Of a stretch of 64,000 nt of DNA, positions 22,998 to 59,290 are shown in pieces; the first letter of the stretch is position 1, and each line of letters opens with the position of its first letter. Source of the stretch: Phyllobates terribilis (lineage: Eukaryota). Location of the stretch: the NCBI RefSeq assembly GCF_046119375.1, contig NW_027362769.1:363382001-363446000 (forward strand). Direction: 5' to 3'. The notes under the pieces were generated by a model. That model saw nothing but the letters and a program-made list of their open reading frames with translations, had not been told where the DNA came from and did no database searches. The translations under genes were made by a program, and so were the position numbers.

Positions 22998-25787
22998 ATG
23001 GGAGGAAGAGAAACCAATCACAAACTAAAATGTTTTTATACAAATGCACAAAGCATGGGCAACAAACAAGGAGAATTGGAACTACTAATGCAGGAAAAGG
23101 AATATGATGTCATTGGAATCACTGAAACTTGGTGGGACGATACACATGATTGGAATAAAAGGCTAAAAGGATACAACTTATTTGCAAGAAACAGACTTGA
23201 TAAACGAGGAGGAGGTGTTGCATTGTATGTTAGAAAAGCGTATATCTGCACAGAGATTGAAGCTTCAGAGACTGGGAGTTCTGTGGAAACTGTTTGGGTA
23301 AGAATACAAGGAGAGAACAACGGAAAGGACACCATTGTAGGCATTTACTACAGGCCACCTGGGCAAGCTGAAGATATGGATGAACTCTTTATGTATCAAA
23401 TGACCAAGTTCTCCAAAAAATATGACGTAGTGGTCATGGGAGATTTCAACTATCCAGACATTTGTTGGGAATCTCTCTCAAGTAAAACTAACAGGTCAAG
23501 CAAATTCTTATCCTCTCTTGCTGACAACTTTATCTTCCAAAAGGTAGGGGAGAAAACAAGGGGATCTGCTACTTTGGATCTAATCCTTATAAACAGGGAG
23601 GAAATGGTTGAGGAGGTAAAGGTGGCTGGGACCCTAGGAGGCAGCGATCATGCTATTATAGAATTTTGGATAACTAGAGGAGGAAGACATGTGAAGACTC
23701 AAACTTCAAGGTTAGATTTTAGAAAGGCAGATTTTAAGAGACTCAGAAAGAGAATAGGAGGGATCCAATGGCTGGATGTCCTTAAGGACAAAAATGTCCA
23801 GGAAGGATGGGAAATTTTTAAAAATGAGATTCTCAAAGCACAGTCGTTAACAATCCCGAAAAGTAGGAAGAATGGGAAGCATTTAAGGAAACCAGGATGG
23901 ATGAACACAGAACTTAAACACATGCTAAAAAGAAAGAAAGAAAGGTTTATTAAATGGAAAGAGGGAGGCATATCTAAAGAAGATTATAATGCAGTCTGCA
24001 GATCCTGCAGGGCACGTATCAGGTTAGCTAAAGCTGACAATGAATTAAGGCTTGCAAGAGATGTCAAAAGCAATAAAAAAGGATTTTGGGGGTATGTCAA
24101 AAGTAAAAGAAAAGTCAAAGATGCTATAGGATTTTTACAGGATGAAAATGGAGAAATGGTAAGAGAGGATGTTGAGAAGGCCGAACTTTTTAATTCCTAT
24201 TTTGCATCTGTTTTCTCTCAGAAAGAAAATGTAACATCAACTGATCTTCACTGTCCTTTTAAAGGAATAGAGGAATCCAAGTTATCAGTAAACAGAAAGA
24301 TTGTGAGGGAATATTTAGCTAACTTAAATGAGTTCAAGTCTCCAGGTCCAGATGAATTACACCCCAGAGTACTGAAGGAGATTGTAGAAGAAATTTTAGA
24401 ACCACTCTCCATAATCTTTGAAAATTCTTGGAGAACAGGAGAAGTCCCAGAAGACTGGAGAAGAGCAAATGTTGTTCCTATCTTCAAAAAGGGGAAGAAG
24501 GTGGACCCAGGGAACTATAGGCCGGTGAGTCTGACATCTATACCAGGAAAGATCTTTGAACAAATTATTAAACAACATGTATGTAAGTACATGGATAAGA
24601 ATGAAGTGATTAACCAGAGTCAGCATGGGTTTGTAACTAACAAGTCATGTCAGACTAACTTAATTTCCTTCTATGACAGAATCACTGACTGGGTGGATCA
24701 GGGAAATGCTGTAGATATAGTATATCTTGACTTCAGCAAAGCATTTGACAAAGTATCTCACATCATCCTTATTGAAAAAATGACCAAGTATGCAATGGAC
24801 CAGGCAACTGTTAGGTGGATTCATAACTGGCTTAGTGATCGGACTCAAAGGGTGGTTGTAAATGGCTTCACATCCAGCTGGATGAATGTCTCAAGTGGGG
24901 TACCACAGGGCTCCGTCCTGGGACCTGTATTGTTCAACATCTTTATCAATGATTTAGATGAAGGAATTGAGGGTAAACTGATTAAATTTGCTGATGACAC
25001 AAAGCTAGGAGGGATAGCTAATACTAGAGAAGAGAGAGAGAGGATTCAAAAAGACCTAAATAAACTGGAGCAGTGGGCAGCAACCAACAGAATGGTTTTT
25101 AACAGGGAAAAATGCAAAGTACTACATCTGGGCAATAAAAATGAAAAAAGCATATACAGAATGGGAGGAATAGAGCTAAGCAACAGTACATGTGAAAAAG
25201 ACTTAGGTATACTAATAGATCATAGACTGAACATGAGTCAACAGTGTGATGCAGCAGCAAAAAAGGCAAATACAATTCTGGGATGTATTAACAGAAGCAT
25301 ACAGTCTAGATCACGTGAAGTCATTATCGGTCTTTACTCCTCTTTGGTCAGACCTCATCTGGAATACTGTGTACAGTTTTGGGCACCACATTTTAAAAAA
25401 GACATCGACAAACTGGAGCAAGTTCAGAGAAGAGCGACCAGAATGGTGACTGGTCTGCAAACCATGTCCTATGAGGAACGGTTGCAGGATTTGGGAATGT
25501 TTAGCTTGCAAAAAAGAAGACTGAGAGGAGACTTAATAGCTGTCTACAAATATGTCAAGGGCTGTCACATTGTAGAAGGATCATCTTTATTCTCATTTGC
25601 ACAAGGAAAGACTAGAAGCAATGGGATGAAACTAAATGGGAGGAGACACAGATTAGATATTAGAAAAAACTTTTTGACAGTTAGGGTGATTAATGAGTGG
25701 AACAGGCTGCCACGAGAGGTGGTGAGTTCCCCTTCAATGGACGTCTTCAAACAGAGGCTGGACAGACATCTGTCTGAGATGATCTAG
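22998..25787 (+). CDS. CR1 ORF2: apurinic-like endonuclease plus reverse transcriptase (929 aa)
   Basis: TNAQS, GITETW, YYRPP, GDFN, SDHA; YRPVSL, QHGF, LDFSKAFD, GVPQGSVLGP, FADD. Confidence 0.95.
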   Translation: MGGRETNHKLKCFYTNAQSMGNKQGELELLMQEKEYDVIGITETWWDDTHDWNKRLKGYNLFARNRLDKRGGGVALYVRKAYICTEIEASETGSSVETVWVRIQGENNGKDTIVGIYYRPPGQAEDMDELFMYQMTKFSKKYDVVVMGDFNYPDICWESLSSKTNRSSKFLSSLADNFIFQKVGEKTRGSATLDLILINREEMVEEVKVAGTLGGSDHAIIEFWITRGGRHVKTQTSRLDFRKADFKRLRKRIGGIQWLDVLKDKNVQEGWEIFKNEILKAQSLTIPKSRKNGKHLRKPGWMNTELKHMLKRKKERFIKWKEGGISKEDYNAVCRSCRARIRLAKADNELRLARDVKSNKKGFWGYVKSKRKVKDAIGFLQDENGEMVREDVEKAELFNSYFASVFSQKENVTSTDLHCPFKGIEESKLSVNRKIVREYLANLNEFKSPGPDELHPRVLKEIVEEILEPLSIIFENSWRTGEVPEDWRRANVVPIFKKGKKVDPGNYRPVSLTSIPGKIFEQIIKQHVCKYMDKNEVINQSQHGFVTNKSCQTNLISFYDRITDWVDQGNAVDIVYLDFSKAFDKVSHIILIEKMTKYAMDQATVRWIHNWLSDRTQRVVVNGFTSSWMNVSSGVPQGSVLGPVLFNIFINDLDEGIEGKLIKFADDTKLGGIANTREERERIQKDLNKLEQWAATNRMVFNREKCKVLHLGNKNEKSIYRMGGIELSNSTCEKDLGILIDHRLNMSQQCDAAAKKANTILGCINRSIQSRSREVIIGLYSSLVRPHLEYCVQFWAPHFKKDIDKLEQVQRRATRMVTGLQTMSYEERLQDLGMFSLQKRRLRGDLIAVYKYVKGCHIVEGSSLFSFAQGKTRSNGMKLNGRRHRLDIRKNFLTVRVINEWNRLPREVVSSPSMDVFKQRLDRHLSEMI

Positions 25788-27599: not shown

Positions 27600-28225
<626 letters not shown>

Positions 28226-28259
28226 GCGCCGCTCCTCCACATCTGTCCGAACAACCAAA

Positions 28260-28275
28260 GGCTCTTCTAAGAGCC
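28260..28275 (+). terminator. Histone 3' stem-loop of H2A
   Basis: GGCTCT-TCTA-AGAGCC followed by ACCAC. Confidence 0.92.
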
Positions 28276-29123
28276 ACCACATCCTCCTTGTAAGAGCCGG
28301 CACCGCTGATAGCAGGCGATGGTCCACACTATATAGAGAGAACAACACGATCTATTCTATGTTCTACTGTATGATTTACTATAGATCAGAAATGTAAAGC
28401 ATTAAATAGGTTGATCCTGCTATATTTTGTAGCGCAGATACTAATTTTAGTCACCCGGCTAATAGAGAGTTAAACGGTGGAGAAAACACTTGTATCTGGT
28501 ATTGGTTGGCGCCTGCTGAGATGTCTGTAATTGGTGGTTTTGAGTTTCCCGCGCAATCTTTCTTTGTGCGTCGGATTATTACCCGCCCCTCTGCTTGTAG
28601 CGGAGATCGCAATCTGAGCAATGCGGTCTGAGCACAGCTCTACCCCTCTGAGAATACAGCGCAGAGCAGCTTTCCCCGAACACGGTAATGGTTCTTATCG
28701 AAAAGAGGATGGTTCTCCACTAATCATTTATGTGAGGTCATGAACCTTCAGCGGCCTCCATATACACTGAGCCTGATACAAGCCCCGTCCTCAATCACAG
28801 GATCTTATGTTTCCATTCTGTAAGCAGCACTCGGAACATCACTACTGATGGGAGCAGTTGCGCATCTTGTATTAAAGAAAGCTGATACTGCTTCCATAAC
28901 TCGGGATATCTACAGATTGCTGTAAGGAACGCAATCAGCCCGTCAAATACTATACATCACTCCAACCACAACAAACTCATCCCTTCAGTGCAAGTATCCT
29001 CAGTTATCAATGAGTGAACATTTTAACTCATGAACAGCGTATAAAGCTTGTACTGGCATTCACACAAGCACAGGGATTGTTACTCCAACAGGAGATTGTA
29101 GCCTCTCACTTAGAAGATGTGGT

Positions 29124-29139
29124 GGCTCTGAAAAGAGCC
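29124..29139 (-). terminator. Histone 3' stem-loop of H4
   Basis: Minus strand GGCTCTTTTCAGAGCC ACCAC. Confidence 0.95.
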
Positions 29140-29171
29140 TTTGGGTTGTCAGGATGGAGCAGAGAACACAA

Positions 29172-29700
<529 letters not shown>

Positions 29701-30740: not shown

Positions 30741-31376
30741 GTTACCGAATAGGAAGTTCCCGCTAAGGGGCTGATGGCTTTTTCTGTCCTTCTGTATCAC
30801 GTAGTTTCAGGACTGTCGGATATCAGGAAATTTGCTTGTGTTGAGCGATCAATGGTCTCTTGGTTCCATACAGGAATTTCTATCATTTTCCAGGATCCAG
30901 GGAACAGTATCCGCTTTCTATAAACACAAAGTGCAGAACTGATTCTAACAATGGTGACTCCATCACACCAGCAATATTCCGAGTGCCGGGAATATAAAGA
31001 AACGAGATACTGCAGTTTACAGAGAACTTTGAAAGAAGGAGGTGGGGATTTTATAAAATGTAGGTTAATATTATCTAGATAAACCTACTACAGAGCTGCA
31101 GAGGATATTAGTCTCTTAATCCTGATACGTTTTCAGGATCAGACCCGTGCGGCTGATAGGAGTCAGCGAGTGTTCACAGGAGATAGCGCTGGATAATGGA
31201 CGTCCTATAATGATCGCATCATATACACCAAGAAATCTGCGCATTTTTTCTAGATTTCTTCACAACACCGTACAGACTCCTAATAGATTATATAAAGATA
31301 TTATTCAATAATCAGGGCAGAGAAGCTGATGTGAGGGATTAGCTCGTTATTATGGAGGGAAAATACTAAAACCCTA

Positions 31377-31690
31377 TGTGTCATATTTGTCTGTACCTAT
31401 GCCTATGGTAGATTGTTTAGTCATATTTGTCTATACCTATGCCTATGGTAGATTGTTTAGTCATATTTGTCTGTACCTATGCCTATGGTAGATTTTTTAG
31501 TCATATTTGTCTGTACCTATGCCTATGGTAGATTTTTTAGTCATATTTGTCTATACCTATGCCTATGGTAGATTTTTAGTCATATTTGTCTGTACCTATG
31601 CCTATGGTAGATTGTTTAGTCATATTTGTCTGTACTTATGCCTATGGTAGATTTTTAGTCATATTTGTCTGTACCTATGCCTATGGTAGA
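31377..31690. repeat. ~39-bp tandem repeat, about 8 copies, in the left MULE TIR
   Basis: GTCATATTTGTCTGTACCTATGCCTATGGTAGATTTTTA; one inverted copy at ~42595-42635. Confidence 0.9.
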
Positions 31691-32351
31691 TTTTTTACAG
31701 TTACAACTCGCTTCTCTGTGTTCCTGAGCTGAGAGAGGCAGGGGGATGTTTTGAGAGTGAGATAAGGCTGGAAGCTAATGTTAATATTGTCTACCTTGAG
31801 ATAGTTTATAAACCCTCCTCTCACACATCCAGGACCCCAGCAACCACAGAATGCAGAGTAAGTGGACATGCTAGCTGGGGCATATCTTACAGAAGTCAAG
31901 CTGCAACACCAGGCTCTCCCATCATCACTTTGGTAAGTATTACGAATAACAGTTTTAAGCTCTGTTTTTTTTATTGGAATAAGTTCATATTAGTGACAGA
32001 AAGTTACTTTCCCAGTTTCATTAAGATTTTTTTAGGGATTCAGTCTTTATGTGCCGCCATATTCTTCCATACCTATGCCTAGAGTGGTTATCATGGTTGG
32101 AAACTGAATAACAGTTTTAAGCTCCGTTTTTTTTTTTATTTGAATAAGTTCATATTAGTACAACAAGGTTATTTTTCCAGTTTCATCAAGATCTTTTTAG
32201 GGATTCAGTCTTTATTTGAATTATAAAGTTGCTATATAGGAATGTATGGGTGTTCAACTTTCTTCCCAAAATAATCTCTGCTAATGGTAACTAGATCTTC
32301 CATCTAAATATAGCACAGTAAATGTTATCTGTCCTCAATCTAGCTTGCCAT

Positions 32352-33459
32352 CAGTGGCGTACCGCCAATGGCGGCAGACCACGCGACTGCTATGGGGCCC
32401 GTGAGCCGGGGGGGGCCCCATAGCAGTCCAGGGGTGGACATACCGCCGGTGCAGCTGCACCGGGGCCTGGAGGGTCATGGGGGCACTTGCCGGGTGGCTA
32501 ATGTTGAGAGGCGGGCAGGGATCGATCCCTGCAGCTCCGCTGCCATGAAAATCTGATCAGATGAGACATCAGTGGTAAGTGCCTGGATGTAAATATTATT
32601 CTGTATCTGCACTGTGTGACTTGGAGTGATAATGTTATCTGTAAAATCCCTTAGGCTGCATTCTCACATTTGTGTGAGAAATGTCCAGATTTTTTTATCG
32701 AATGGTCCATGGACTCGTAGAGTTCTATACATCCATTCACACATCCATGAAAATCATGGATCTGAGAATGAGATCTGTGAGGGTCAGAGAATGTCCTGTT
32801 CTGATCCGATTTTGAGGATTAGAATAGGACATGCTCAATATGTCTGTAAAATAGGGCAGCACACCAACACTGCACACAGATACAAGAATGTAGCCTTATT
32901 ATGTATAGCACAGTCCCTTAGAATATAGTGTATTCACTTATTATGTATAGCACAGTCCCTTAGTATATAATGTACTCACTTATTATGCATAGCACAGTCC
33001 CTTAGTATATAGTGTACTCACTTATTATGTATAGCGTTGTCCTTAATTATTTAGTTTCATCTTTTATTATGTATAACACCCTCCCTTATTACCTACCATC
33101 CCCTCTAGCTCTAGTGGGTCACAGTTAGGGGATCATACTGTGTTGGGTTCAGCATACTTTGCCCTGGGAGTTGAGATGGGGTACAGTAGGGTCATTATAC
33201 TGCTCATGTGGAGGAATTCACCTTGGGCGTATCATTGTGTTTGGGGGGGGGGGGGCACTTTTGTTGGCATCATACCTTATGGGGGCAATGAAAGAGGAAC
33301 CTAGGACTTCAGCAGGAGGAAAATTACTATGTAAAGGCTGGAAAGTTGTGAGATCTGCTCTTCTGTGATCCCGACAATTATTTACATTTTTTTGGGGGGC
33401 GGGGGGGGGGCAATTAGAACTTCTGCTATGGGGCCCCATGATTCCTATGTACGCCCCTG
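32352..33459. mobile_element. hAT non-autonomous element nested in the MULE
   Basis: CAGTGGCGTAC ... GTACGCCCCTG TIRs; 8-bp TSD CTTGCCAT/CATGCCAT (7 of 8 match). Confidence 0.8.
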
Positions 33460-34019
33460 CATGCCATATAATAAATGGCTCCATACAATGTAGCTGCCTC
33501 TGCTGAAGTCAAGTTTTCACTTCCAGGATGGATGATAATTCTTCGGTTTGGGTTTGTTGGGGATAAAACTTGGAGTACTGTACTGGTAGCTGCAAACGTT
33601 GGACCTCTGCACGGTCTGTCAAATTTTCTTCATGCCACCGGTAGGAAAGTGCTTTAAGCCGGCATGGTTGTTGACCTTACCATACTCACCCTACTGTCTT
33701 ATACGTTGTCTATTACTATTTACAGTTAAAATGTAGGAATATACAGTATCATAACGGTTATCTAAAGTGCTTCTATTTTAAAGGATATATCTTGTTAGTG
33801 TCTCATACAAAGTATTTGTGGATATGGTGTAAAAGTTACCAACTTTTCTGACATTTCAGAGGATACAATTTCACTAATTTGGAGAAAAGGTCCACTGGAC
33901 AACCCTGCTACATAGGATATTTCTCTTCAGTATGCTTACATTCAAGAACTAACAAAAAGGTAGTATGAAGTTTTGTGTGATTTATGGCTTAGCTTCTTTT
34001 GATACTAATCTTAAGTATA

Positions 34020-34973
34020 TGTGTCGCCCAGGGGATGGGGACTACTCGGAACCCGGGCCTTGTTACTGGGGATGTCGCGGTAGTCGGCTCCCGGGCCCGT
34101 ACTCTGGGCCTCTCTTTAAAAAGGGTGGATGATTATTATATGGAAGTTCGTGACACCACCTGTGGTGTCTGGTGAGGTTCACCAGTGCTGCGGCAGTCCG
34201 CTGAGGCCGATGATAAGGCAGCTCGGTGGTATAGCTCCCCACAGGTGGAGCTAGGCCCCAGGGCAGTGTATGAAGAGGGGAATGCAGGACGGGGAAGCCC
34301 AGTCGGGCCTACGGAAAGACAGGCAAACACACACAGTTCTCTTCAGTACCTTTTACTGATGGAATTCAGGCACATCCCGGAGCGCTGTAGGGTGAAGGGT
34401 GCATTGCCGGATTCTCCCCCAGGGAGCGGGGATAGGGCCTCCCGTTTCCTGCCTTTGTGTGGTAAGTTTCTGACCTGCCTGTAGCTAAGCCTAACTTTGT
34501 CTCTGTCCTGCACTGGCTGAAGTTGTGGTAGGGCCTTCTCTTAGAGTGCACGCTCCCAGCTTGCGGGGCCTATGTGTCTCCTGGCTCTGTTACGTATCAG
34601 CGCTTTAGTGATTCTGAGACCTGTAGTTCTCCAGGGTTTCCAGTTGTACTTTACTGGGTCATAGAGATCCCGGTAACTTCGGACTCGGTGTCCGGTATAA
34701 GTTTCGGGGTGAGCTGGTTAAGCTCCTCTGCCCCCAATGCTACTAACTCTCGACTCGCCTTCGGCCACGCTCGGGCCTTCACTAGGCTACTCACACTAAC
34801 GGCAGCTTGCCACGCTTCACCGCTCTAAACGGCGTCGGCACGCCTTGGGCTCACTTACTTGAGCTCCGGAGTCTGGACTGGGCCTCAGGATTGCTGGAGG
34901 CACAGTTTACCTCACACGGCAACCTGGAACTGCTCTGCACACTTGCTCCTCTCCCTGTGCACTTGGTACCACA
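34020..34973 (-). mobile_element. Solo LTR or LTR fragment related to the cold-shock-domain LTR family, nested in the MULE
   Basis: Begins TGTGTCGCCC; shares CAGTCCGCTGAGGCCG and GCAGCT..GGTGGTATA blocks with the LTR at 8051; right end uncertain. Confidence 0.5.
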
Positions 34974-35092
34974 TTTACTTAAATTTTAAAATTGCTTTTC
35001 ATTTCAGACTGAATTTTATTTTATTGAATCAGCTTTGGCTTCAAGTAGTTTTGAATAATTTAAGATTTCTAATTTTGCATTAAATAATTAAA

Positions 35093-35095
<3 letters not shown>

Positions 35096-35155
<60 letters not shown>
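35096..35155. repeat. (TA)n microsatellite
   Basis: Direct reading. Confidence 0.95.
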
Positions 35156-35163
<8 letters not shown>

Positions 35164-35171
35164 TTATTTAA

Positions 35172-36172
35172 AGAGTAACTATCAATTGTTTTAAATTAAT
35201 ATTTTTATTATGTTAAAAAAATTGAATAGGTCTTCATTATTATTTTTTTTAGTTTTTGTAACTATTCCTACACTAAACTGTCCCTAACGCTGCGTTTTTT
35301 GCTACGTTTTTTTATGCTAATTATGCTAATTTAAAGCAGCAAAGTACAGTACCAGCAAAGTCTATGAGATTTGCAGAATTGCTGTTCACACGCTTGTTCT
35401 TTTTTACCTGCATTTCTTGTTTATTAACTGCTTTTTTCAAAGAATGAACATGTCAAATCTTTGCTGCGTTTTTTGCTGCTTTGCTCCATAGGAAGCAATG
35501 ATAAGGCAAAAACAGAGCAAAAACGCAGCAAACCAACATTTTGCAAGCAGGTCAAAAGTTCATGGTTTTTCCAAAGATTTTTGCTGCTACCTAATTAGCA
35601 TAAAAAACGCAGCAAAAAACGCACCGTGTGAACTTAGCCTAAATCACTCAGTTGCAAAAACGCAACCGACTGTCCCTTGCCAAGCTATCCTCCTAAACCG
35701 TTTTCACATTGAAGACGCTTTAGTACAATGAATGCGCGTCCCCGGGCATCACATGAGTGCTTAGCTCGCTTCTCATGGGAAGAGAGCCAGCGCACCGCTG
35801 TACTGAATGAATGGCAGCCGTGCCATCCCAGGCGCCATGTAATCTACTGCACTGCAACCCCGGGAGACATCTCCTGAGGCTTCAGCGTATATACGTTCTG
35901 TATATAGACCGATGCTGCCTGCGCAGCATGGCTCTGTATACCGCGATGTGCGGGCACTCCGGCGAGGACGCCCACACGTCATCAGCCGGCGTGCACGTGC
36001 ATCCTGGCATTTGTTCAGTTGCGGGATGGCCCAGAAGAGGAGCTTCGTGGATCGACAGGAGTGTAATTAAGAAGTTTTTTATTTTTAAACTGGTCCAAAT
36101 GGGTTCAGGGGGGAGGGGGGGGCCCAAAAAAAAAAAAAAAAGAAAAGAAAAAAGGTAAATGATAGTTGATCT
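35172..36172. mobile_element. Kolobok/T2-type MITE (TTAA flanks), itself carrying nested inserts
   Basis: TTAA-AGAGTAACTATC ... GATAGTTGATCT-TTAA; homologous to 40319-40709. Confidence 0.65.
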
Positions 36173-36266
36173 TTAAATGACTTCTTGTTTTGGTTTTTAT
36201 ATTGTTTGAATTTCTGTATCTTTTTTTCATAATTAAAAAAAAAGTTCTTTACAGGAATTTTGAACA

Positions 36267-39200
36267 ATGGGCATCAAATCTTTGGTAAAGAAAAATAAAA
36301 GAGAATCTACAGTACCAGAGAATGAAGAAATACAAAAAAACCCAGGCAAAAATAAGGACGTGACAAAATTAAGTTCCGAACAAACAGTTTCAGAGACAAC
36401 TAATTCACATTCAACATCAAGATTTTTAGCATTGTCTCTTCCATTTCACAATAAGAAGAAACCAAAAAGTGGTGGAAATTTAAAGAAATGTATATGCACT
36501 GAAGACTTATTGAAAGCTGCTACTAGAGTGTTTGAAAGAAGTCCAAACACTGAAGTGAATTCAAGCGTTAGTAGTGGGAGCTTCTGGTGCAAGCTTGCAG
36601 AAGAAGTAGCGCCAAAAACCAAAACGCACAGAAAAAAACTTATCCGAAATTATAGCTTAGCATGTAGAAACCTCTGGGACACAGATTTCAACTTTAGAGA
36701 ATGTATTATGAAAGTCACCAACAAAGAAAAATGTGAAAAACAAGGAATCCCACGGCAACCTCTTTCTCAAACTATTGGTGAACAAAGTCTGCCTACATTA
36801 AATGAACAAAAACCAGAACTGGAGAATGAAATGAAGAAGGGTTGTGATGACAGCGCTCTTGGTAAATACAACAAGAGTGAAGCAGTGTCTGATGACATGG
36901 AATCATTCACTGGAGACAACAGTTACTGTTCAGAGAAAGGGCTACATGAAAGTAATTCAACTGGTAAGGATGAATTTGTGATTTATGAGCCCAAAAATAT
37001 TACCAATAACAATGTTTACACAAAAATACTGACAAAATTAACACCAACTGAAGCATTTGAGATTCTGAAGAAAGGTGATAAGTGTAGGGTGACCAATTTG
37101 CCACCACTTAATCCACAGCATGGTTATGTGTTTTACTTTTACAAAGAAGGAAAAGCAAGGGATTGCATAGCAGATCAATTGCAGTTTGATTACATCTCCA
37201 GGAATAAGTATACCTTTAAAGGGGAAACATGCTTCAAGGTTATATACAAGCCAAGACACCCACCAGAAGAGGCATGTGAACTTTTTGAAAAGTACATTTT
37301 TAGCCTCGGTCAAACTGATAACAGTTGCAGGCTAATTCAGTACTTTGGAAATCCAAATACAATGCAGCTTAAAGCCCATGGTAATCGCAAACACTACAAG
37401 AACAAGATATTTTTTACTACTGCACCATCAATCATTAAAGAGCAGAGGGAAAACTTATCACAGCCACCCATGAAAGTTTATAAAGCACAGTGTACACGTT
37501 TCATACCTCCACAATATGAAGCTGCTTTAGGACCGCGTGATGTAAAGCAGGCACAAAACAGTGCTATGAGAGAGTGTGTAAAGCGTCGTTTGTGCCAAGA
37601 TGATGTTTATTCCATAGTTGAATTGGAGCGCTTGTTTGGTGGTTTTGTAATGCAGCTAGATGTCCTACATGATTTCTATTGTATCCTTGCAAAAGAAGAA
37701 CTAATAGAAGAAGCGAATACATTTGCAAAACACAAGGACAGCAACTTTAGTTGTGACACAACTTTCGAGTTTGGTGATTTTTATGTGACTACTGTCACAT
37801 TTAACCACCCTGCTTTTCAAAATGCATGTGTAATTTCAATTTTCATATTGATGCACCAAAAGAAAGATGAAGGTACACACAGAAAGTTCTTCAATTTTAT
37901 TTCTGAAAAGTGTCCAGCATTTAACAGCAACATGGTGAAAATCATTACTGACCGTGAAAAGGCAATTACAAACAGTATAGATGCACAGCTTCCCCAGGTT
38001 AAACGATTCCTGTGTTGGAACCACATGAGGAAAGATGTGCAATACTGGACGCAAAGGCATGGTGGACAACAAATGGACAAATTAACATATGAAAGCTGTA
38101 TTTACAGTTTAATGAACAGCAAGACACCAAACGAATATGTAAGTAAGTTAGAAGAACTTAGCCAACATTGGACAGAAGAATTCCTCACTTACTATAAGAA
38201 GCACCTGGAATCAGATATCCTCAATTACTGTGCACGGTGGCTTTTAGAAGAACACAACATGTTCATAGAACCTTCAGGAATAACAACAAATCAAAGTGAG
38301 AGTTTTAATTCTGTGCTAAGAAGACTTCATGATGGGAAAGAAATAAACATGGAAGGTTTTGTTCTGTCTATGTTTTACTTAACTTCTTACTACACAAAGG
38401 AAGTTCTGAGAGGGAGATGTGGACTGGGTAACTTCAACCTGAAAGGAGAGTTCCGGGCTCTTAACCCAGCTGATGTATCATTTCCTGAAGTACTGGTAAC
38501 ACCCGAAAGCTTGGTGGAATTTGTAAAGGAACAAAAACTTGTGATCACAAAAGAAAATGCATGTAAAACAGGAAGCCATCTGCCAAGAAGAACAATGGCA
38601 GAAGGAATTCTCAATACACCAGGTGGTATTGTGTTGGTGCCACAGCAGAAAGTATTCCTTGTTAAAGGTTTTAAAAATGAATCTTACATTGTGCAACTTT
38701 TCCCAAAGACTTCTTGTTCATGTCCATCATCCAGACAGTGTCACCACATTATGGCAGTTCAGCTATCAGTGGGATTGGATCCAAGGGAAGAGACAGATGA
38801 AGGAAATCTAAGCAGGTTGTACAAAAAACAAAGGGGAAAAGGAAAAAGTGGACGGAAGTTCACTTCTAAACCATTATTGACATCTCCAGCCGATGACTCA
38901 ATCCAAAGCATGAATCTAAATAATGGAGACGAGGAGGCAATACTTACAACACAAGTTATGCCAGGATACAGTGCACGAACTGCAAAAATTGTTAAAATAT
39001 CACCACCTGAACCATCCGTAGGTATGTCTAAACTTCATGTCTTAACCACAAAAAAGCTTGTTCCAGCAAGTAAGTCAAAAGCGGTCATTGTGAAAAAGAA
39101 ACTAAATTTGCAAAAGCCTCTGAAAACATCAACCCCAAAACAAAGTATAAGATCAGAGGCAGAGTCACTGAAATACTACAAAACCAGTAGAATGAAGTCA

Positions 39201-40235
39201 ATCAGTGCAATTGCTGAGACACATGCACATAAACTACCAAATGATGTTATCGCTGAAGTGGACCGTATAATGATCAAGAAGATCAACATGGATACTTTAA
39301 GTGGACAGCAGTGGCTGGATGACACAATTATTGATGCATACTTGGCACTACAATGTAGTGTAGCCATGGGGAAAAACCCTCACCTGAAATTTGCCTACAT
39401 TCCATGTAACTTCGTTGAAGCATTTTGCAAGAAGTGGACTAAAAGCAAAACACCCTATCACACTACAATGATACATGGGAAGAGAAACAACATATGGCAC
39501 AAGGATATCATATTAATACCTTGCTATATATTTGGCAACCATTGGGTGCTAACAATAGTAGTGCCAAAATATAGAAGTGTCTATTATATAGACAGCAAGT
39601 ACAGTGCAGAGGATAAGAAAGTTGTACAGGCAGTCCATGTTCTTCTGAAGGTGTTATCCCATTTGTGTGAAGGAGAGCCATATAACAAAACATGGAAATG
39701 GGTGAAGCCAGTTGATGTCCTGATACAGAAGGATGGCTCCAGTTGTGGAGTTTATGTTTGTATCTGCGCACATGTTTTAGCAAATGGGACCACCATTTGA
39801 CTAAACCATGATGAAGTACACAACTTTCGTGATTTTATTTCTACTGAATTACAAGCAGTGGTTCCAGGCACAGTAAAAGTTACCACACTTACTGGTGATA
39901 CAACTGTGACACTCCCAGAAGTAAGTAGTCAGTGGTGGTCAGATGCAGATTTTACACCAACTGTGCAACCAGGACCTCAAAACTTTTGTACTCTTAATTG
40001 GATGACTAATTTATGTAATACAATTTGGGAAGCCAATTCAAGCATCTGTTATGCAGGAGTGAATTGTTGCCAGCCTAATAGAAATGTGTGTGCAACAGAG
40101 GAAGATATGAAAATGGTTTTCTGTGAATTTGCATGCCAAGAATGGTACCACAAAGCATGTGAAGGACTATCTGATAAACAATTACCATCTATGTACAAAT
40201 GCAGAAAATGTCAAAATGCTGAATTTGAGGTGTAA
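36267..40235 (+). pseudogene. MULE transposase - SWIM - Ulp1/C48 protease - PHD finger ORF (1322 codons) with one in-frame TGA at 39798-39800
   Basis: DDE motifs CDTTF, TDREKAI, CWNH, TTNQSESFN; SWIM CSCPSSRQCHH; Ulp1 WLDDTII, NHWVL, YIDS, QKDGSSCG; PHD C..C..FCEFACQEWYHKAC..YKCRKC; 39801-40235 continues in the same frame. Confidence 0.85.
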
Positions 40236-40318
40236 AGTACCTTTTCCTTGTTAGTATGTAACATTATTAAGCAACTTATGTTTTAAGTGTAAACAGAATA
40301 TGTTTGATTTCTTTTTAA

Positions 40319-40709
40319 AGAGTAACTATCAATTTTTTGTTATTAACATTTATTATATATATGAAAAAAATTTTTTTGAATAGGTCTTTTTTTTTATTCT
40401 TACATTTTTCACACATCCTACAATAATCTGTCCCTAAATCACTAGTTTGAAAACATGCAACTAACTGTCCCTCGCTAAACTATTCTCCTAAAGCGTATTC
40501 AGATTGAAGACGTTTTAGGAGAATGAATGCCCGAGGATGCGCGTGCACGCGCATTCCGGCAACTGTTCAATTGCACTTTGGCCCAGAAGAGGAGCTTTGT
40601 GGGCCGACAGGAGGGTAAATAAGAAGTTTTCTTATTTTAAACAGGTTCTAATGGGTAAAGGGGGTAAGGGGATTCTAGAAAACAACCCTTCAAACATGTT
40701 AGTTACTCT
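40319..40709. mobile_element. Kolobok/T2-type MITE
   Basis: TTAA-AGAGTAACTA ... TAGTTACTCT-TTAA. Confidence 0.7.
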
Positions 40710-41019
40710 TTAATATGGTTTTGTCAAGTATTCGTAATCCATTCAGTTGTGTAAATGTTAATTTAAATATTTCTCCAAAATAAAAGTTTTATGTAACTTA
40801 GACTTGATGCTATGTTTTGATTTGTTTTAAATAAGGTTATGTCAATATTCGCAATCCGTTCAGTCATGTAAGTGTTCACTTAATTTTTTTTCTGTAATGA
40901 AAATACTTTTATGTAATTTATACTTCATCATCTGATCTAGGATTCAGCATTCATTTCAAATCTACAGTAACATATATGAGACTTGTGTTTACAACAGACA
41001 GCTTAATTTCGCCTCATAA

Positions 41020-41325
41020 GGGCTCGTTCACACAGACAGCGTTTGCGCGTTTTTTCAGCGCATCCGTCCTGCACTGAAAAAGTGAGCCTATTGTTGTCAA
41101 TGGGCTAGTGCAGACACTACGCTTTTTCTGCGCATCGAACGGATGCGCAGAAAAAAGCGACAGCTTGTCCGTTTTTGCCGCGCAGAACGGACTGCCGCCG
41201 CCTATTTGAATGACTGTGTGAGCTAAAAACCAGCGACACAGTAATTCAGCATGCTTTTCTTATACGCGTGCGCATAAAAAGCGCATGCACATAACGGAGC
41301 CGAAACGGCCAGTGTGAGTGAGCCC
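41020..41325. mobile_element. PIF/Harbinger-like MITE
   Basis: TAA | GGGCTCGTTCACAC ... GTGTGAGTGAGCCC | TTA. Confidence 0.7.
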
Positions 41326-41829
41326 TTAATTTTTTTTAAAATAAAGTAAACTGTATATTTTATTTTATCAGTAAACTGAGATCAGAGAGATTATATAAAT
41401 TAAGAAAACCATTTAAAAAAAAACTGTGCCACTGCCATAGTCTTGTGTGAAAATCAAACAAACAAAAACAAGGGCTTTAAGGCAAAATTTTTCGATAAAG
41501 ATCTACTTAGGGATTCACTGTTTATTTGAAATGTAAAGTTATTATATAAGAATGCATGAATTAACATGGTTGAAAACAGAATTAGATTTTTAAGCTCTGT
41601 TTTTCTTGTTGGAATAAGTTCATATTAATGACAAACTTATTTTCAGAGTTGCATCAAGATCTTCTCAGGGATTCAGTGTGTATTTGAAATTTAAAGTTAC
41701 TAAATAGAAATGTATGGGTTTGCCTTGTTGAAAACACAATTATAGTTTTAACCTCTGCTACTTTATTTTTAAATAGAGTGAAGTGGAAATGAAAAATACA
41801 TTAAAAAAATTCAACTGTAAAAAAAAAAA

Positions 41830-42460
41830 TACCATAGGCCTAGGTATGGCAGAATGTGGCGGCGCATAAAGACTGATTCCCTAAAAAGATCTTAATGAAA
41901 CTTGGAAGATAACCTTGTTGTACTAATATGAACTTATTCCAATAAAAAAAACGGAGCTTAAAACCGTTATTCAGTTTCCAACCATGATAACACACTAGGC
42001 AGAGGTATGGAAGAATATGGCGGCGCATAAAGACTGAATCCCTAAAAAGATCTTAATGAAACTTGGAAGATAACCTTGTTGTACTAATATGAACTTATTC
42101 CAATAAAAAAAACGGAGCTTAAAACCGTTATTCAGTTTTCAACCATGATAACACACTAGGCATAGGTATGGAAGAATATGGCGGCGCATAAAGACTGAAT
42201 CCCTAAAAAGATCTTAATGAAACTTGGAAGATAACCTTGTTGTACTAATATGAACTTATTCCAATAAAAAAAACGGAGCTTAAAACCGTTATTCAGTTTC
42301 CAACCATGATAACACACTAGGCAGAGGTATGGAAGAATATGGCGGCGCATAAAGACTGAATCCCTAAAAAGATCTTAATGAAACTTGGAAGATAACCTTG
42401 TTGTACTAATATGAACTAATTCCAATTAAAAAAAAGGAGCTTAAAACTGTTATTCAGTTT
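41830..42460. repeat. ~158-bp tandem repeat, about 4 copies, in the right MULE TIR
   Basis: Inverted homologues at 31940-32220 (left TIR) and 41500-41760. Confidence 0.9.
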
Positions 42461-42671
42461 CCAAAAAAGTTAACCCCTACATTCATGTATAGCAACTTTA
42501 TGTCAAATAAATACATAAGTAAATAAATTGGTTATTCTGCTTCAAATAGAGTGAAATGGAAAGGAAAACTAAATTAAGAAAATGAAACTGTAAAAAAAAA
42601 CTACCATAGGCATAGGTATAGATAAATGTGGCACATAGGGTTTTAGTATGCACCATTATGGAGGATTTGGT

Positions 42672-42687
42672 GGCTCTGAAAAGAGCC
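42672..42687 (-). terminator. Histone 3' stem-loop of H3
   Basis: Minus strand GGCTCTTTTCAGAGCC ACCAA. Confidence 0.95.
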
Positions 42688-42716
42688 TTTGTGTTAGTCA
42701 GACGTGTAGGACGGAT

Positions 42717-43181
<465 letters not shown>

Positions 43182-43775
43182 TTATACTCCTCTGCTCCTG
43201 TTACCGCGTCATATGAACACGCCCCCTACACTGCATTGATAATATCATAAATTAACATGAGCCGCCAAAACAGGTGTGATATCCGAGACCAATCATTATT
43301 CCCAAAATCATCCCAACGCCCATTAATCCCGCCCTCAAAAAGAGGGGCAGGGTCTCTGTTCACACTCTTTTCTGGCTGCGGATACTGGCACAGGGTCACA
43401 CCATGTCTACATGCGGCTTCTACAGCAAGAGCCGCCGTCGTCACTGTTCTATGTCACCAGTACACGGAGCTGTACAGGGTCTACTCTATCATCAGTCAAA
43501 TCACTGGTTCTCCAATTCTCTCATCGAACTAATAACCGCACACTAATCCTTTCACTAATAAAGACGCAGGTTACAAGTGGTGATTGATTAGGATGATGTA
43601 GATTTCTGTAGGACATCGGCCCCTTCCCTCCATTGATTACACTGATCGGTCACCTGCACTGGTGTGATCGGGACACAGCGCAGCTCTATGCGGAGATGTG
43701 GGGAAAAGCTTATTCATTATAACACTGGAGCCGCTCCCTGTACACACTATAATCTAGAAGCGGCAGCATATACGG

Positions 43776-44400
43776 GCACTGATCATACAGATCTGCCGGG
43801 GACAAGGTGGTGGCACTGATCATACAGCTCTGCAGGGGACAAGGTGGTGGCACTGATCATACAGCTCTGCAGGGGACAAGGTGGTGGCACTGATCATACA
43901 GCTCTGCAGGGGACAAGGTGGTGGTACTGATCATACAGCTCTGCCGGGGACAAGGTGATGGCACTGATCATACAGCTCTGCCAGGGACAAGGTGGTGGCA
44001 CTGATCATACAGCTCAGCCGAGGACAAGGTGGTGGCACTGATCACACAGCTCTACAAGGAACAAGGTGGTGGCACTGGTCACAGCTCTGCCAGGGAAAAG
44101 GTGGTGGCACTGATCAATCAGCTCTGCAGGGTACAAGGTGGTGGCACTGATCATACAGCTCTGAAGGGGACAAGGTGGTGGCACTGATCATACAGCTCTG
44201 CCGGGGACAAGGTGGTGGCACTGATCATACAGCTCTGCAGGGTACAAGGTGGTGGCATTGATAATATAGCTCTGCCGGGACAAGATGATGGCACTGATCA
44301 TACAGCTCTGCAGGGTACAAGGTGGTGGCACTGATCATACAGCTATGAAGGGGACAAGATGATGGCACTGATCATACAGCTCTGCAGGGAACAAGGTGGT
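43776..44400 (-). repeat. 37-bp minisatellite, about 17 copies, containing the H1 cleavage site and U7-binding HDE
   Basis: Minus-strand unit GCCACCACCTTGTCCCCTGCAGAGCTGTATGATCAGT; abuts the H1 stem-loop. Confidence 0.92.
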
Positions 44401-44416
44401 GGATCTGAAAAGAGCC
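44401..44416 (-). terminator. Histone 3' stem-loop of H1 with a C:T mismatch in stem pair 3
   Basis: Minus strand GGCTCTTTTCAGATCC versus consensus ...AGAGCC. Confidence 0.85.
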
Positions 44417-44446: not shown

Positions 44447-45103
44447 TTATTTCTTAGCTGCGGGCTTCTTGGCTTTAGCTGCCTTCTTAGCAGGACTCTT
44501 GGCAGCTTTGGGTTTAGCAGCTTTCTTAGCCGGACTCTTCGTCACCTTCTTGGGCTTCGGAGCGGCCTTTAGCTTCTTGGGGCTCTTGGCCGCCTTCTTG
44601 GCAGCTGCTGCGGGCTTCTTGGCCTTTTTCGGGCTCTTCTTGGCCGCGGTCGGAGCCTTCTTGGGCTTCTTAGGAGACTTGGCGGCTTTCTTGGCTGCAG
44701 CAGGCTTCTTGGGCTTGGCATCAGCTGCTGACTTCTTCCTGGCCGCTTTGTCCTTAGTCTCCTGCTGCTTCTTGTTCAGCTTGAAGGACCCGGAGGCGCC
44801 GCTGCCCTTCACCTGGAGGAGGGCGCCCTTGGTGACCAGAGACTTGACGGCCAGCTTCAGGCGGCTGTTGTTCTTCTCTACATCGTATCCTCCGGCACAC
44901 AGAGCCTTCTTCAGGGCGGCCAGAGACACCCCACTGCGCTCCTTAGAGGCGGACACGGCTTTCACGATCAGATCGGAGACGCTGGGACCGGAGGGCTTCT
45001 TGCTTTTTTTGACGCCCCCGGCGGCGGATTTTTTCGGCTGCTTCTTGGATTTGGCGGCCGGTTCCGCGGGAGGGGGAGCGGCGGCTGGTGCGGTCTCTGC
45101 CAT
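44447..45103 (-). CDS. H1: Linker histone H1, somatic type, 218 aa (true ATG at 45103)
   Basis: [15 protein letters not shown]; globular domain [39 protein letters not shown]; Lys/Ala/Pro-rich tail with SPKK motifs. Confidence 0.96.
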
Positions 45104-45195
45104 CGTGTGCTGCGGAACTAGAACACAAATATCTCCTGATAGGAAACAAAACACTGAGGCCGGAGCTGGAGGCGCCTGTTATATGTACAGGCTTA

Positions 45196-45603
<408 letters not shown>

Positions 45604-57245: not shown

Positions 57246-58329
57246 GAGAGCCAGGCGGAGGTGACCGAGCGGACCGGGAGGACCAGTAGGAGGCGACCGG
57301 AGGGACGAGCGCAAGAGAGCGCTGTGGCAGCGTGCAGTGCCGGCCAGCGGAGGGTGCCAGGTGGTGGTGACCAGGAGGTGATCAGGAGGACCGGTAAGAG
57401 GCGACCGGAGGGACAAGCGCGCTGTGATAGCGTGCAGCGTCCCTAGAGGAGGTGAGTGAGGGGCAGGAGGCCGCGATAAGCGGCCCTACTGAACCCAAGT
57501 GTGTACTGTACTGTATTGTATTTGTATCTGTATTGTAATTGTATTGTATTCCCTAGTCCATATTTAATTGATTACCCCCCCGTCCATATTTAAATTGATT
57601 CCCCTGAACACCCCTGTCCATATTTAACTGATCCCTCTGACCACATTAAATTGACCCCCCGTCCTCATTTAATTGATCCCCGACCACCCCCCGTCCATAT
57701 TAAAGTGATCCCCCTGACCACATTTAAATGATTGACCCCCCCAGCCCATAATTGATTGATCCCCCTTGTCCTATTTAATAGATTCCCCTTGTCCACTTTT
57801 ACTCATCCCCAGTCCCTATCTATTTGCCTTATCCCCCACCATATTTAATTAACCCCTGTCCATAATTAATTGATTGATTCCCCAGACCACAATTAATTAT
57901 TTCCCCAGTCCATATTTATTGATATTATTGATACTTATTGATCCCCAGTCCTTAGTTAATTGACCCACCGTCCATACCTATTTATTTGCTTTACCCCAAA
58001 TCGTATTTAATTAAACCCCCTGTCCATAATTAATTGATTGATTCCCTAGTCCACAATTAATTATTTCCCCAGTTCATACTTATTGATCCCAGTCCATAGT
58101 TAATTGACACACCGTGCATACTTAATTAATCCACCTGACCCACTCAGCTGATCCCCCGTCCATACTTAATTGATACTTAATTGATCCCCCGTCCATACTT
58201 AACTGATCCCGCGCCGATATCTAATCGATACACTTGCACATCCCTAATTGATCCCCGTCCATACTCCTATATATAAATAATTGTGTTTTGTACTTGTACA
58301 TATATACTGACTGTATCCCCATATTTAGA

Positions 58330-59256: not shown

Positions 59257-59290
59257 AGATGGGGGGGGAAACCACGGAAATAGGTGGGAT

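What the first reader, a model, noticed from the sequence alone, without database searches (positions are those of the whole stretch)
31339..42687. The MULE insertion separates the H3 stem-loop from its U7-binding site
Removing the element and one TSD copy rebuilds, on the minus strand, GGCTCTTTTCAGAGCC-ACCAAATCCTCCATAAT-AACGAGCTAA. The last block (31339-31348) resembles the HDE consensus AAAGAGCTG at the expected distance. It now lies 11.3 kb away, and the TIR sequence that replaces it has no GAGCT core. U7-dependent cleavage needs the HDE, so this coding-intact H3 is predicted to be mis-processed or to read through.
Basis: partly seen in the sequence, partly recalled or inferred. Interest (0 to 1): 0.7.

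Follow-up and report, generated by a model that had tools for sequence, protein, structure and literature searches.

The report
Transposon splits histone H3 processing signal
An 11.3-kb jumping gene landed 17 bases behind the hairpin of one intact frog histone H3 gene and pushed its probable RNA-cutting signal 11.3 kb away, which probably spoils this copy's RNA processing but matters little, because uninterrupted H3 copies exist.

Summary
An intact H3.2 gene (42717-43127, minus) ends in a canonical stem-loop (42672-42687). Seventeen nt further on it is interrupted by an 11,296-bp Mutator-like element (31359-42654). The element has terminal inverted repeats, a perfect 10-bp target-site duplication (ATTATGGAGG) and an open 1177-aa transposase ORF.

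Removing the element and one duplication copy rebuilds stem-loop, 17 nt, then AACGAGCTAA. A contig from an independent DNA run carries this uninterrupted arrangement with a single ATTATGGAGG. It is a paralogue, 25/30 identical in the far flank. Three of four paralogous 3' flanks keep ACGAGCT although their spacers differ. H2A and H1 in the window carry a GAGC core at the same distance, and H4 a related GAGAGGC. The displaced block is therefore very probably the H3 downstream element (HDE).

The functional prediction is reasonable but untested.
- Two possible RNA runs gave no contig on the junction.
- Pairing energy with the mammalian U7 5' end does not separate the rebuilt site (-8.6 kcal/mol) from the present one (-9.0).
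- The neighbouring cluster segment is already degenerate.

Earlier unchecked notes of this scan report other transposon-disrupted H3 copies on other DNA of this genome. This is an ordinary transposon knock-out of a redundant gene's 3' signal. I found no described natural case.

The parts
42717..43127 (-). Intact replication-type histone H3 coding sequence (136 aa, stop codon at 42717-42719)
   Evidence: ORF list. Pfam Histone PF00125, E 8e-49. The translation is a canonical H3.
43179..43186 (-). TATAAATA box about 52 nt upstream of the H3 start codon. An inverted CCAAT lies further upstream, so the promoter looks intact.
   Evidence: Read directly from the sequence. Function is inferred.
42672..42687 (-). 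[quoted passage not shown]
   Evidence: Exact pattern match. Rfam RF00032, 35.6 bits. All six pairs form with probability 0.83-1.0 in both the present and the rebuilt context.
42665..42671 (-). ACCAAAT: the 3' flank of the stem-loop, holding the expected cleavage site (after ACCA)
   Evidence: Sequence. The cleavage position is inferred from the mouse H2a substrate, ACCCA//, in PMC5435866.
42655..42664 (.). Target-site duplication, H3-proximal copy (ATTATGGAGG)
   Evidence: The uninterrupted paralogous contig has a single copy (run X2 record 13).
31349..31358 (.). Target-site duplication, distal copy (ATTATGGAGG)
31359..42654 (+). Mutator-like element, 11,296 bp, apparently autonomous. The ORFs lie on the + strand, antisense to H3.
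   Evidence: TIRs (I13), a 10-bp TSD and the ORF domains. Contigs from other copies of the family break off at 42654/42655 into unrelated flanks. The ends occur only once each in this window.
31363..31418 (+). Left terminal inverted repeat
   Evidence: pair I13: 56 nt, 89% complementary to 42594-42649.
42594..42649 (-). Right terminal inverted repeat. It now follows the H3 stem-loop in the pre-mRNA.
   Evidence: pair I13. An 85-nt contig of run X2 is identical to 42570-42654 (record 10).
31380..31697 (+). Subterminal array, 40 bp x 8
   Evidence: Tandem Repeats Finder and motif count.
41835..42464 (+). Subterminal array, 161 bp x 3.9, inverted relative to 31944-32215
   Evidence: pairs I1-I8.
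36267..39800 (+). Open 1177-aa ORF: MULE transposase core, SWIM zinc finger and C-terminal Ulp1 (C48) protease
   Evidence: Pfam: Peptidase_C48 53 bits (above cut-off), MULE 22.9 bits (cut-off 27.6), SWIM 17.8 bits (cut-off 19.6). The ESM Atlas feature neighbours of residues 400-900 are MULE/SWIM clusters, score 0.94.
39858..40235 (+). 125-aa ORF with a PHD finger directly after the transposase ORF
   Evidence: Pfam PHD, 25.4 bits, cut-off 24.
31339..31348 (-). Displaced HDE-like block AACGAGCTAA. It stood 17 nt after the stem-loop before the insertion and is now 11,323 nt from it.
   Evidence: The ACGAGCT core recurs in three of four paralogous H3 flanks. H2A and H1 have a GAGC core at +19. 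Pairing with U7 is weak.
41762..41767 (-). First canonical AATAAA on the H3 read-through strand, 905 nt after the stem-loop, followed by a GT-rich stretch. Candidate poly(A) site for read-through RNA.
   Evidence: Motif scan. Its use is inferred, not shown.

Best explanation
A recently mobile, apparently autonomous Mutator-like transposon inserted into the spacer between the 3' stem-loop of a replication-type histone H3 gene and its histone downstream element (HDE). It duplicated 10 bp of that spacer.

The coding sequence, promoter, stem-loop and cleavage site are untouched. The purine-rich block that paralogous H3 genes keep about 17 nt behind the stem-loop now lies 11.3 kb away, and transposon end sequence without a GAGC core stands in its place.

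U7 snRNP must pair with the HDE at a fixed, short distance from the stem-loop, so transcripts of this copy are predicted to escape U7-dependent cleavage. They would run into the transposon, antisense to its genes. If they end up stable at all, they would be polyadenylated at a cryptic site, the first AATAAA being 905 nt downstream.

Shown: the insertion, its boundaries, the pre-insertion sequence, and recurrence of the block in paralogues. Inferred: that the block is the working HDE, that the gene is transcribed, and that processing fails. Uninterrupted paralogues exist, apparently in many copies, so the event is most likely neutral.
For: - Exact anatomy, TIRs and the stem-loop.
- Intact H3.
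- MULE/SWIM/Ulp1 ORF. The 10-bp duplication lies within the 8-11 bp typical of MULEs (PMC6446971).
- Run X2 contig record 13 carries the uninterrupted form with one ATTATGGAGG and AACGAGCTGA behind it. Further variants read AGACGAGCTGA and GGACGAGCTAAT: the core is kept while the spacers differ.
- Other copies of the element end at 42654/42655 with other flanks.
- In-window H2A and H1 have a GAGC core at +19, H4 has GAGAGGC from +17, and the rebuilt H3 has GAGCT at +21. The background chance of GAGCT in that slot is 0.9%.
- There is no GAGC in the 45 nt now following the stem-loop.
- Literature: the HDE lies about 15 nt past the cleavage site and pairs with the U7 5' end (PMC5435866). The hairpin-HDE distance is critical (PMC1635294). 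U7 acts as a molecular ruler (PMC7026596). In Drosophila, failed processing gives read-through and polyadenylation at cryptic sites (PMC4896052).
Against: - There is no RNA evidence. The two runs guessed to be RNA gave no contig on the junction, and all runs were contigs, which cannot show 3' ends.
- With the human/mouse U7 5' end as a stand-in, the rebuilt site pairs at only -8.6 kcal/mol (38% of background windows do as well) and the present site at -9.0 (33%). Energy alone does not show a loss.
- The in-window H4 is equally weak, so weak HDEs that depend on SLBP seem normal here.
- This copy reads GAGCTAA where the best-supported paralogue reads GAGCTGA, so its HDE may already have been sub-optimal.
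- No contig bridged the insertion junction in independent runs, so presence in other individuals is unknown.
- The recurring core in paralogues could partly reflect recent common descent rather than selection.
Confidence: 0.6

Rival explanations
1. The copy is transcriptionally silent or already on its way to being a pseudogene. It sits in a degenerate, transposon-laden part of a very large histone array, so the insertion has no RNA phenotype at all.
For: - The neighbourhood is degenerate. H1 has a mismatched stem-loop followed by a 37-bp x17 minisatellite.
- A truncated H2A fragment is fused to the H1 promoter.
- No H2B was seen, and LINE and cold-shock-domain ORFs are nearby.
- Uninterrupted paralogous flanks exist at high word depth.
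- Earlier unchecked notes list other transposon-disrupted H3 copies and histone clusters spread over megabases.
- No RNA contig was laid.
Against: The coding sequence is a perfect canonical H3. The TATA box, the CCAAT element and the stem-loop are intact. Silence is not shown either, because the RNA data were uninformative.
Confidence: 0.25
2. The gene is still processed adequately. SLBP on the intact stem-loop, together with weak fortuitous pairing of U7 to the transposon end (CUAAAA with UUUUAG, about 12 nt further downstream than normal), recruits enough U7 snRNP, perhaps with a shifted cleavage site.
For: - The duplex energy of the present sequence (-9.0) equals that of the rebuilt one (-8.6).
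- SLBP stabilises U7 on weak HDEs (PMC5435866; PMC1635294).
- Substrates with 4- or 12-nt insertions are still cleaved in vitro, at shifted sites (PMC7026596).
Against: The pairing is six A-U-rich base pairs outside the CUCUUU core, with no GAGC. It lies at the wrong distance, and the literature says distance is critical. The in vitro insertion substrates had strong HDEs.
Confidence: 0.12
3. AACGAGCTAA is not the working U7-binding site of this H3 family. It is shared among paralogues only because they are recent duplicates, and the resemblance to AAAGAGCTG is coincidental.
For: - Complementarity to the mammalian U7 5' end is weak, with a C where the consensus has A.
- The paralogous contigs are short and closely related (25/30 identity in the flank).
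- One paralogous variant has AAGGAGCC instead.
Against: - The core is kept while the spacers before it differ (CATAATA, CAAG, CTCAGG).
- It sits at the same distance as the GAGC cores of H2A and H1 in the window and the AAAGAG core of mouse H2a.
- The chance of GAGCT in that slot is 0.9%.
- No better candidate lies within 45 nt.
Confidence: 0.1
4. The junction is an assembly artefact that joins an H3 copy to a transposon copy from elsewhere.
For: No contig from the independent runs bridged 42654/42655 with 31 letters on each side. Both sides are multi-copy.
Against: A perfect 10-bp duplication flanks the element exactly at both TIR ends. The distal flank continues the paralogous H3 downstream sequence (25/30 identity to the uninterrupted contig). 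A chimeric join would not produce this. The missing bridge is expected for short contigs of low-coverage runs at repeat borders.
Confidence: 0.02

Closest known systems
Bipartite 3' processing signal of metazoan replication-dependent histone genes (stem-loop bound by SLBP, plus HDE bound by U7 snRNP)
   Same: The stem-loop is canonical and has an ACCA flank. In the rebuilt site a purine-rich GAGCT block starts 17 nt after the stem-loop. That matches the geometry of mouse H2a (AAAGAG from +17) and of the other histone genes in the window.
   Different: In the present DNA the two halves are 11.3 kb apart. The block has only 5 contiguous pairs to the mammalian U7 5' end (AACGAGCUAA against AAAGAGCUGU). 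The frog U7 was not available.
[quoted passage not shown] 1995; H2a+4 and H2a+12 substrates in PMC7026596)
   Same: [quoted passage not shown] The expected outcome is a shifted or lost cleavage.
   Different: Here the change is a natural event of 11,306 bp (element plus one duplication copy), not 4-12 nt. It sits in a chromosomal gene and has no assay behind it.
Read-through and cryptic polyadenylation of histone mRNAs when SLBP, U7 or FLASH is lost (Drosophila mutants, PMC4896052)
   Same: The predicted fate of the transcript is the same: failure of U7-dependent cleavage, transcription past the normal end, and use of a downstream AATAAA.
   Different: Those are trans-acting defects that affect all histone genes. 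This is a cis defect of a single copy. The poly(A) signals here belong to a transposon, and their use is not shown.
Mutator-like elements (MULEs), including plant KI-MULEs that carry a Ulp1 protease domain
   Same: It has terminal inverted repeats with subterminal repeat arrays, a 10-bp target-site duplication, MULE-like and SWIM-like transposase regions (both below Pfam's cut-offs), a Ulp1 C48 domain, and insertion next to a gene.
   Different: The host is a frog. A 2019 survey found no convincing MULE transposase in vertebrates (PMC6446971). The Pfam MULE and SWIM hits are below their curated cut-offs, and the word search for relatives found none.

Membership tests
Replication-dependent histone 3' processing signal | 16-nt stem-loop (6-bp stem, 4-nt loop) with A-rich 5' flank and ACC(C)A 3' flank | tested here: met
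   GGCTCTTTTCAGAGCC at 42672-42687(-), flanked by ACAAA and ACCA. Rfam RF00032, 35.6 bits against a gathering score of 34. Stem pair probabilities are 0.83-1.0.
Replication-dependent histone 3' processing signal | Purine-rich HDE about 15 nt downstream of the cleavage site | tested here: not met
   In the present sequence, positions +15 to +27 read AATGGTGCATACT and no GAGC occurs within 45 nt. In the rebuilt sequence the feature is met: AACGAGCTAA from +18, 69% purine.
Replication-dependent histone 3' processing signal | HDE complementary to the 5' end of U7 snRNA | tested here: inconclusive
   The human/mouse U7 5' end from PMC7026596 served as a stand-in. Energies: rebuilt -8.6, present -9.0, paralogue -11.6, H1 -14.0, mouse H2a -16.9 kcal/mol. 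Background median is -7.7. The frog's own U7 was not available.
Replication-dependent histone 3' processing signal | U7- and SLBP-dependent cleavage giving a non-polyadenylated mRNA | not testable with these tools
   Only contig runs were on offer, and the two possible RNA runs gave no contig.
Mutator superfamily (MULE) | Terminal inverted repeats | tested here: met
   56 nt, 89% complementary. The outermost 4-5 nt differ.
Mutator superfamily (MULE) | Target-site duplication of 8-11 bp | tested here: met
   ATTATGGAGG, 10/10 identical, at both ends. It is single in the uninterrupted paralogue. The range is taken from PMC6446971.
Mutator superfamily (MULE) | MULE-type DDE transposase domain, often with a SWIM zinc finger | tested here: inconclusive
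   PF10551 scores 22.9 bits against a cut-off of 27.6, and PF04434 17.8 against 19.6. The Atlas feature neighbours are MULE/SWIM clusters at 0.94. Catalytic residues were not examined.
Mutator superfamily (MULE) | Several copies at different genomic sites (mobility) | tested here: met
   Contigs of run X2 match the right end up to 42654/42655 and continue into at least two unrelated flanks. One 85-nt contig is identical to this copy's end.

The most novel reading that the evidence does not exclude
The insertion did not simply kill the copy. It converted a replication-dependent H3.2 gene into a polyadenylated gene uncoupled from the cell cycle, one that uses a poly(A) signal supplied by the transposon's subterminal region (AATAAA 905 nt downstream). 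This would be a natural one-step route from a replication-coupled to a replacement-like histone gene. If those sites are skipped, H3-driven read-through in S phase would instead make antisense RNA across an intact vertebrate Mutator transposase and feed its silencing.
Probability: 0.1. Interest if true: 0.55.

Novelty: new member of a known kind. Interest (0 to 1): 0.27.

Why it matters
If RNA data bore it out, this would be a natural, in-genome counterpart of the classic insertion mutants that defined the spacing rule between the histone stem-loop and the U7-binding element. It would also show how single copies in a very large histone array are disabled by transposons while their coding sequence still looks perfect. 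That is a caution for gene counts based on open reading frames alone.

It does not open a new question about histone mRNA processing, and the effect on the animal is probably nil. The transposon itself may be the more notable object. It is an apparently intact Mutator-like element in a vertebrate, where a 2019 survey found none convincing. It is the subject of a separate finding.

Tried and rejected
- **Reads.** One search for runs and one laying on 42440-42716. I kept the stretch to 277 non-coding letters. This avoided the conserved H3 coding sequence (human-like, confounded by paralogues) and the 161-bp repeats. All runs were contigs, the possible RNA runs X9 and X16 gave nothing, and no contig bridged the junction. 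Expression and polymorphism are therefore untested.
- **Relatives of the transposase.** The word-based protein search with residues 400-900 onward found nothing. Exact look-ups of the transposase and of H1 in public assemblies found nothing, so no long paralogous cluster units could be fetched. I did not look up H3, H4 or H2A by exact sequence, because these proteins are shared with human and would have fetched human contigs.
- **U7 pairing energy as a test of HDE loss.** Inconclusive. The rebuilt and present sites score alike, and both lie within the background.
- **Rfam over the whole window.** Only the H4 and H3 stem-loops were found, and no U7 gene.
- **Notes of this scan, searched by words.** Blank. 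By place they gave context only.
- **Literature.** No paper in the searchable library combines the HDE with a natural transposon insertion at that site.
- **Assembly-artefact reading.** Rejected because of the perfect duplication and the matching distal flank.
- **Large profile search and structure prediction for the transposase.** Not run. The element's family is not what this finding turns on.
Full report
**Observation**

The window holds a histone cluster segment: H2A at 27809-28225(+), H4 at 29172-29483(-), H3 at 42717-43127(-) and H1 at 44450-45106(-). The H3 ORF is open and encodes a canonical 136-aa H3. A TATAAATA box stands 52 nt upstream of its ATG, with an inverted CCAAT further up.

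On the minus strand the H3 3' UTR ends in GGCTCTTTTCAGAGCC at 42687-42672. Rfam's histone 3' stem-loop model matches 42648-42692(-) at 35.6 bits, above its gathering score of 34. The hairpin is predicted to form with pair probabilities of 0.83-1.0 whether the transposon end or the rebuilt flank follows it.

After the hairpin come ACCAAATCCTCCATAAT and then GGTGCATACTAAAACCCTATGTG, the end of the inserted element.

**The insertion**

- ATTATGGAGG stands at 31349-31358 and at 42655-42664, immediately outside two 56-nt inverted repeats that are 89% complementary (31363-31418 and 42594-42649).
- The element (31359-42654, 11,296 bp) carries a 40-bp x8 array at the left end and a 161-bp x3.9 array at the right end.
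- It holds an open 1177-aa ORF on the + strand. Pfam gives a Ulp1 C48 protease domain (53 bits) plus MULE (22.9 bits, cut-off 27.6) and SWIM (17.8 bits, cut-off 19.6) hits.
- A PHD-finger ORF follows the transposase ORF.
- The ESM Atlas feature neighbours of residues 400-900 are MULE/SWIM clusters, score 0.94.
- A duplication of 10 bp lies within the 8-11 bp typical of MULEs (PMC6446971).
- The element's ends occur nowhere else in the window.
- In DNA run X2, contigs match the right end up to 42654/42655 and then continue into at least two unrelated flanks. One 85-nt contig is identical to 42570-42654. The family is therefore multi-copy, and at least one other copy shares an identical end.

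**The pre-insertion site**

Removing the element and one duplication copy gives, on the minus strand: stem-loop, ACCAAATCCTCCATAAT, AACGAGCTAATCC. Contig record 13 of run X2 (75 nt, word depth 460) covers 42655-42688 and continues on the far side with ...GAAGCAGATGTGAGGGATCAGCTCGTT.

This contig is the uninterrupted arrangement, with one copy of ATTATGGAGG. Its far side is 25/30 identical to window 31319-31348. It is therefore a paralogous H3 3' flank, not the empty allele of this locus.

**Is the displaced block the HDE?**

Evidence for:
- Other loose ends read, on the minus strand, CCAAATCCTCCA-AGACGAGCTGA, CCAAATCCTC-CTCAGGACGAGCTAAT and CCAAATCCTCC-CACTAAGGAGCC. Three of four paralogous variants keep ACGAGCT while the spacer in front differs.
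- In the window, H2A has AAGAGCC and H1 has AGAGCTG, with GAGC starting at +19. H4 has GAGAGGC from +17.
- The mouse H2a substrate printed in PMC5435866 has AAAGAG from +17. That paper places the HDE about 15 nt past the cleavage site.
- In the rebuilt H3, GAGCT starts at +21. A GAGCT start at +17..+24 occurs in 0.9% of background positions of this window.

Evidence that weakens it: I took the 5' end shared by human and mouse U7 (AGUGUUACAGCUCUUUUAG, Methods of PMC7026596) as a stand-in for the frog's U7 and computed duplex energies with the 45 nt after each stem-loop.

| Site | Duplex energy (kcal/mol) |
|---|---|
| Mouse H2a | -16.9 |
| H1 (nine contiguous pairs) | -14.0 |
| H2A | -12.1 |
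| H3 paralogue (X2 contig) | -11.6 |
| H3, present | -9.0 |
| H3, rebuilt | -8.6 |
| H4 | -8.6 |
| Background median | -7.7 |

- The H1 pairing suggests that the stand-in is adequate.
- The block of this copy is a weak partner, with 5 contiguous pairs and a C where the consensus has A.
- This copy also reads GAGCTAA where the best-supported paralogue reads GAGCTGA.
- The present sequence reaches the same energy through CUAAAA:UUUUAG. Those six A-U-rich pairs lie about 12 nt further downstream than the normal register and outside the CUCUUU core.
- Energy alone therefore does not demonstrate loss of U7 binding. Position, loss of the GAGC core and the paralogue comparison do suggest it.
- Weak HDEs that depend on SLBP are known, for example mouse H1t (PMC1635294).

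**Mechanism**

Established knowledge, not tested here:
- U7 snRNP pairs with the HDE, and SLBP on the hairpin stabilises it (PMC5435866).
- The hairpin-HDE distance is critical (PMC1635294 and its references 13-15).
- The cleavage site is measured from the HDE (PMC7026596).
- In Drosophila, failure of processing gives read-through and polyadenylation at cryptic downstream signals (PMC4896052).

Applied here:
- The mature part of the mRNA is untouched.
- The pre-mRNA has lost its U7 site, so cleavage should fail or be very inefficient.
- Transcription would then enter the element antisense to its ORFs.
- The first AATAAA on that strand lies 905 nt after the hairpin (41767-41762) and is followed by a GT-rich stretch. 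Further signals lie at 1146 and 1308 nt.
- A polyadenylated read-through RNA would probably end in the right subterminal region, before reaching the PHD and transposase ORFs.

**What could not be shown**

- All runs offered were contigs. The two runs guessed to be RNA (X9, X16) gave no contig on the 277-nt stretch. There is therefore no evidence on transcription, 3' ends or read-through.
- No contig bridged the junction in runs X1 or X2. That is expected at the border of two multi-copy sequences in low-coverage runs, but it leaves fixation or polymorphism open.
- I kept the laid stretch off the H3 coding sequence and did not look up H3, H4 or H2A proteins by exact sequence, because these are shared with human.

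**Context**

- The neighbourhood is degenerate. H1 has a G-to-T mismatch in its stem and a 37-bp x17 minisatellite behind it.
- A truncated H2A (about 64 codons) runs into the H1 promoter.
- No H2B was seen, and LINE, cold-shock-domain and other repeat ORFs surround the genes.
- The uninterrupted paralogous contig stands at high word depth, although the tool warns that depth is not a copy number.
- Earlier notes of this scan, which are unchecked AI notes, name the genome as a poison frog with histone clusters spread over megabases. They list other H3 copies disrupted by transposons, so the scan has met this kind of event before on other DNA.
- Loss of one copy is therefore most likely neutral.

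**Comparison and novelty**

The event works like the laboratory insertion mutants between hairpin and HDE, and like the trans-acting processing mutants of Drosophila. Here, however, it is a natural cis lesion of a single copy.

I found no paper in the searchable library that describes a natural transposon insertion between a histone stem-loop and its HDE. The kind of event, a transposon removing a cis signal from a redundant gene, is ordinary.

The element itself may deserve more attention. PMC6446971 found no convincing MULE transposase in vertebrates and asked whether MULEs are really absent there. That belongs to a separate finding on the same stretch.

**Verdict**

| Question | Verdict |
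|---|---|
| Observation | Confirmed |
| Structural interpretation | Supported |
| Functional prediction | Plausible, untested |
| Biological weight | Low |

Noticed in passing
window 31359-42654: The element looks like an intact autonomous Mutator-like transposon in a vertebrate: an open 1177-aa ORF with MULE-like (sub-threshold), SWIM-like (sub-threshold) and Ulp1 C48 regions, plus a PHD ORF. Other copies with an identical 85-nt end stand at other sites. A 2019 survey (PMC6446971) found no convincing vertebrate MULE. The word search for protein relatives found none.
   Followed up: partly
window 45340-45531 (-): A truncated H2A gene. Its first ~64 codons and its own promoter are intact. The homology then breaks off and the sequence runs straight into the CCAAT boxes of the H1 promoter.
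   Followed up: partly
window 43775-44416: The H1 stem-loop has a G-to-T change that breaks one stem pair (GGCTCTTTTCAGATCC). It is followed by a 37-bp x17 minisatellite whose unit contains the AGAGCTGTATGATCAGTGCC block that directly follows the hairpin.
   Followed up: partly
window 27809-29483: H2A(+) and H4(-) converge tail to tail, with stem-loops at 28260-28275 and 29124-29139. The H2A loop reads TCTA, not TTTC, and did not reach the Rfam gathering score. No H2B gene was seen beside H2A.
   Followed up: no
window 58288-62191 (+) and 22998-25787 (+): Two LINE ORF2s with endonuclease and reverse transcriptase domains. The one at 59291-62191 is preceded by an ORF with a GDSL lipase/esterase-like domain (58288-59256), as in CR1/L2-type elements that have an esterase ORF1.
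   Followed up: no
window 9896-11152 (-): A 418-aa ORF with a cold-shock domain inside repeat-like sequence.
   Followed up: no
window 42660-42695, run X2 contigs: Contigs share the stem-loop plus ACCAAATCCTCC at very high word depth (up to about 2,300). They diverge both upstream of the stem-loop (at 42695) and after the spacer. This short 3' module is therefore shared by many gene copies whose surrounding sequence differs.
   Followed up: no
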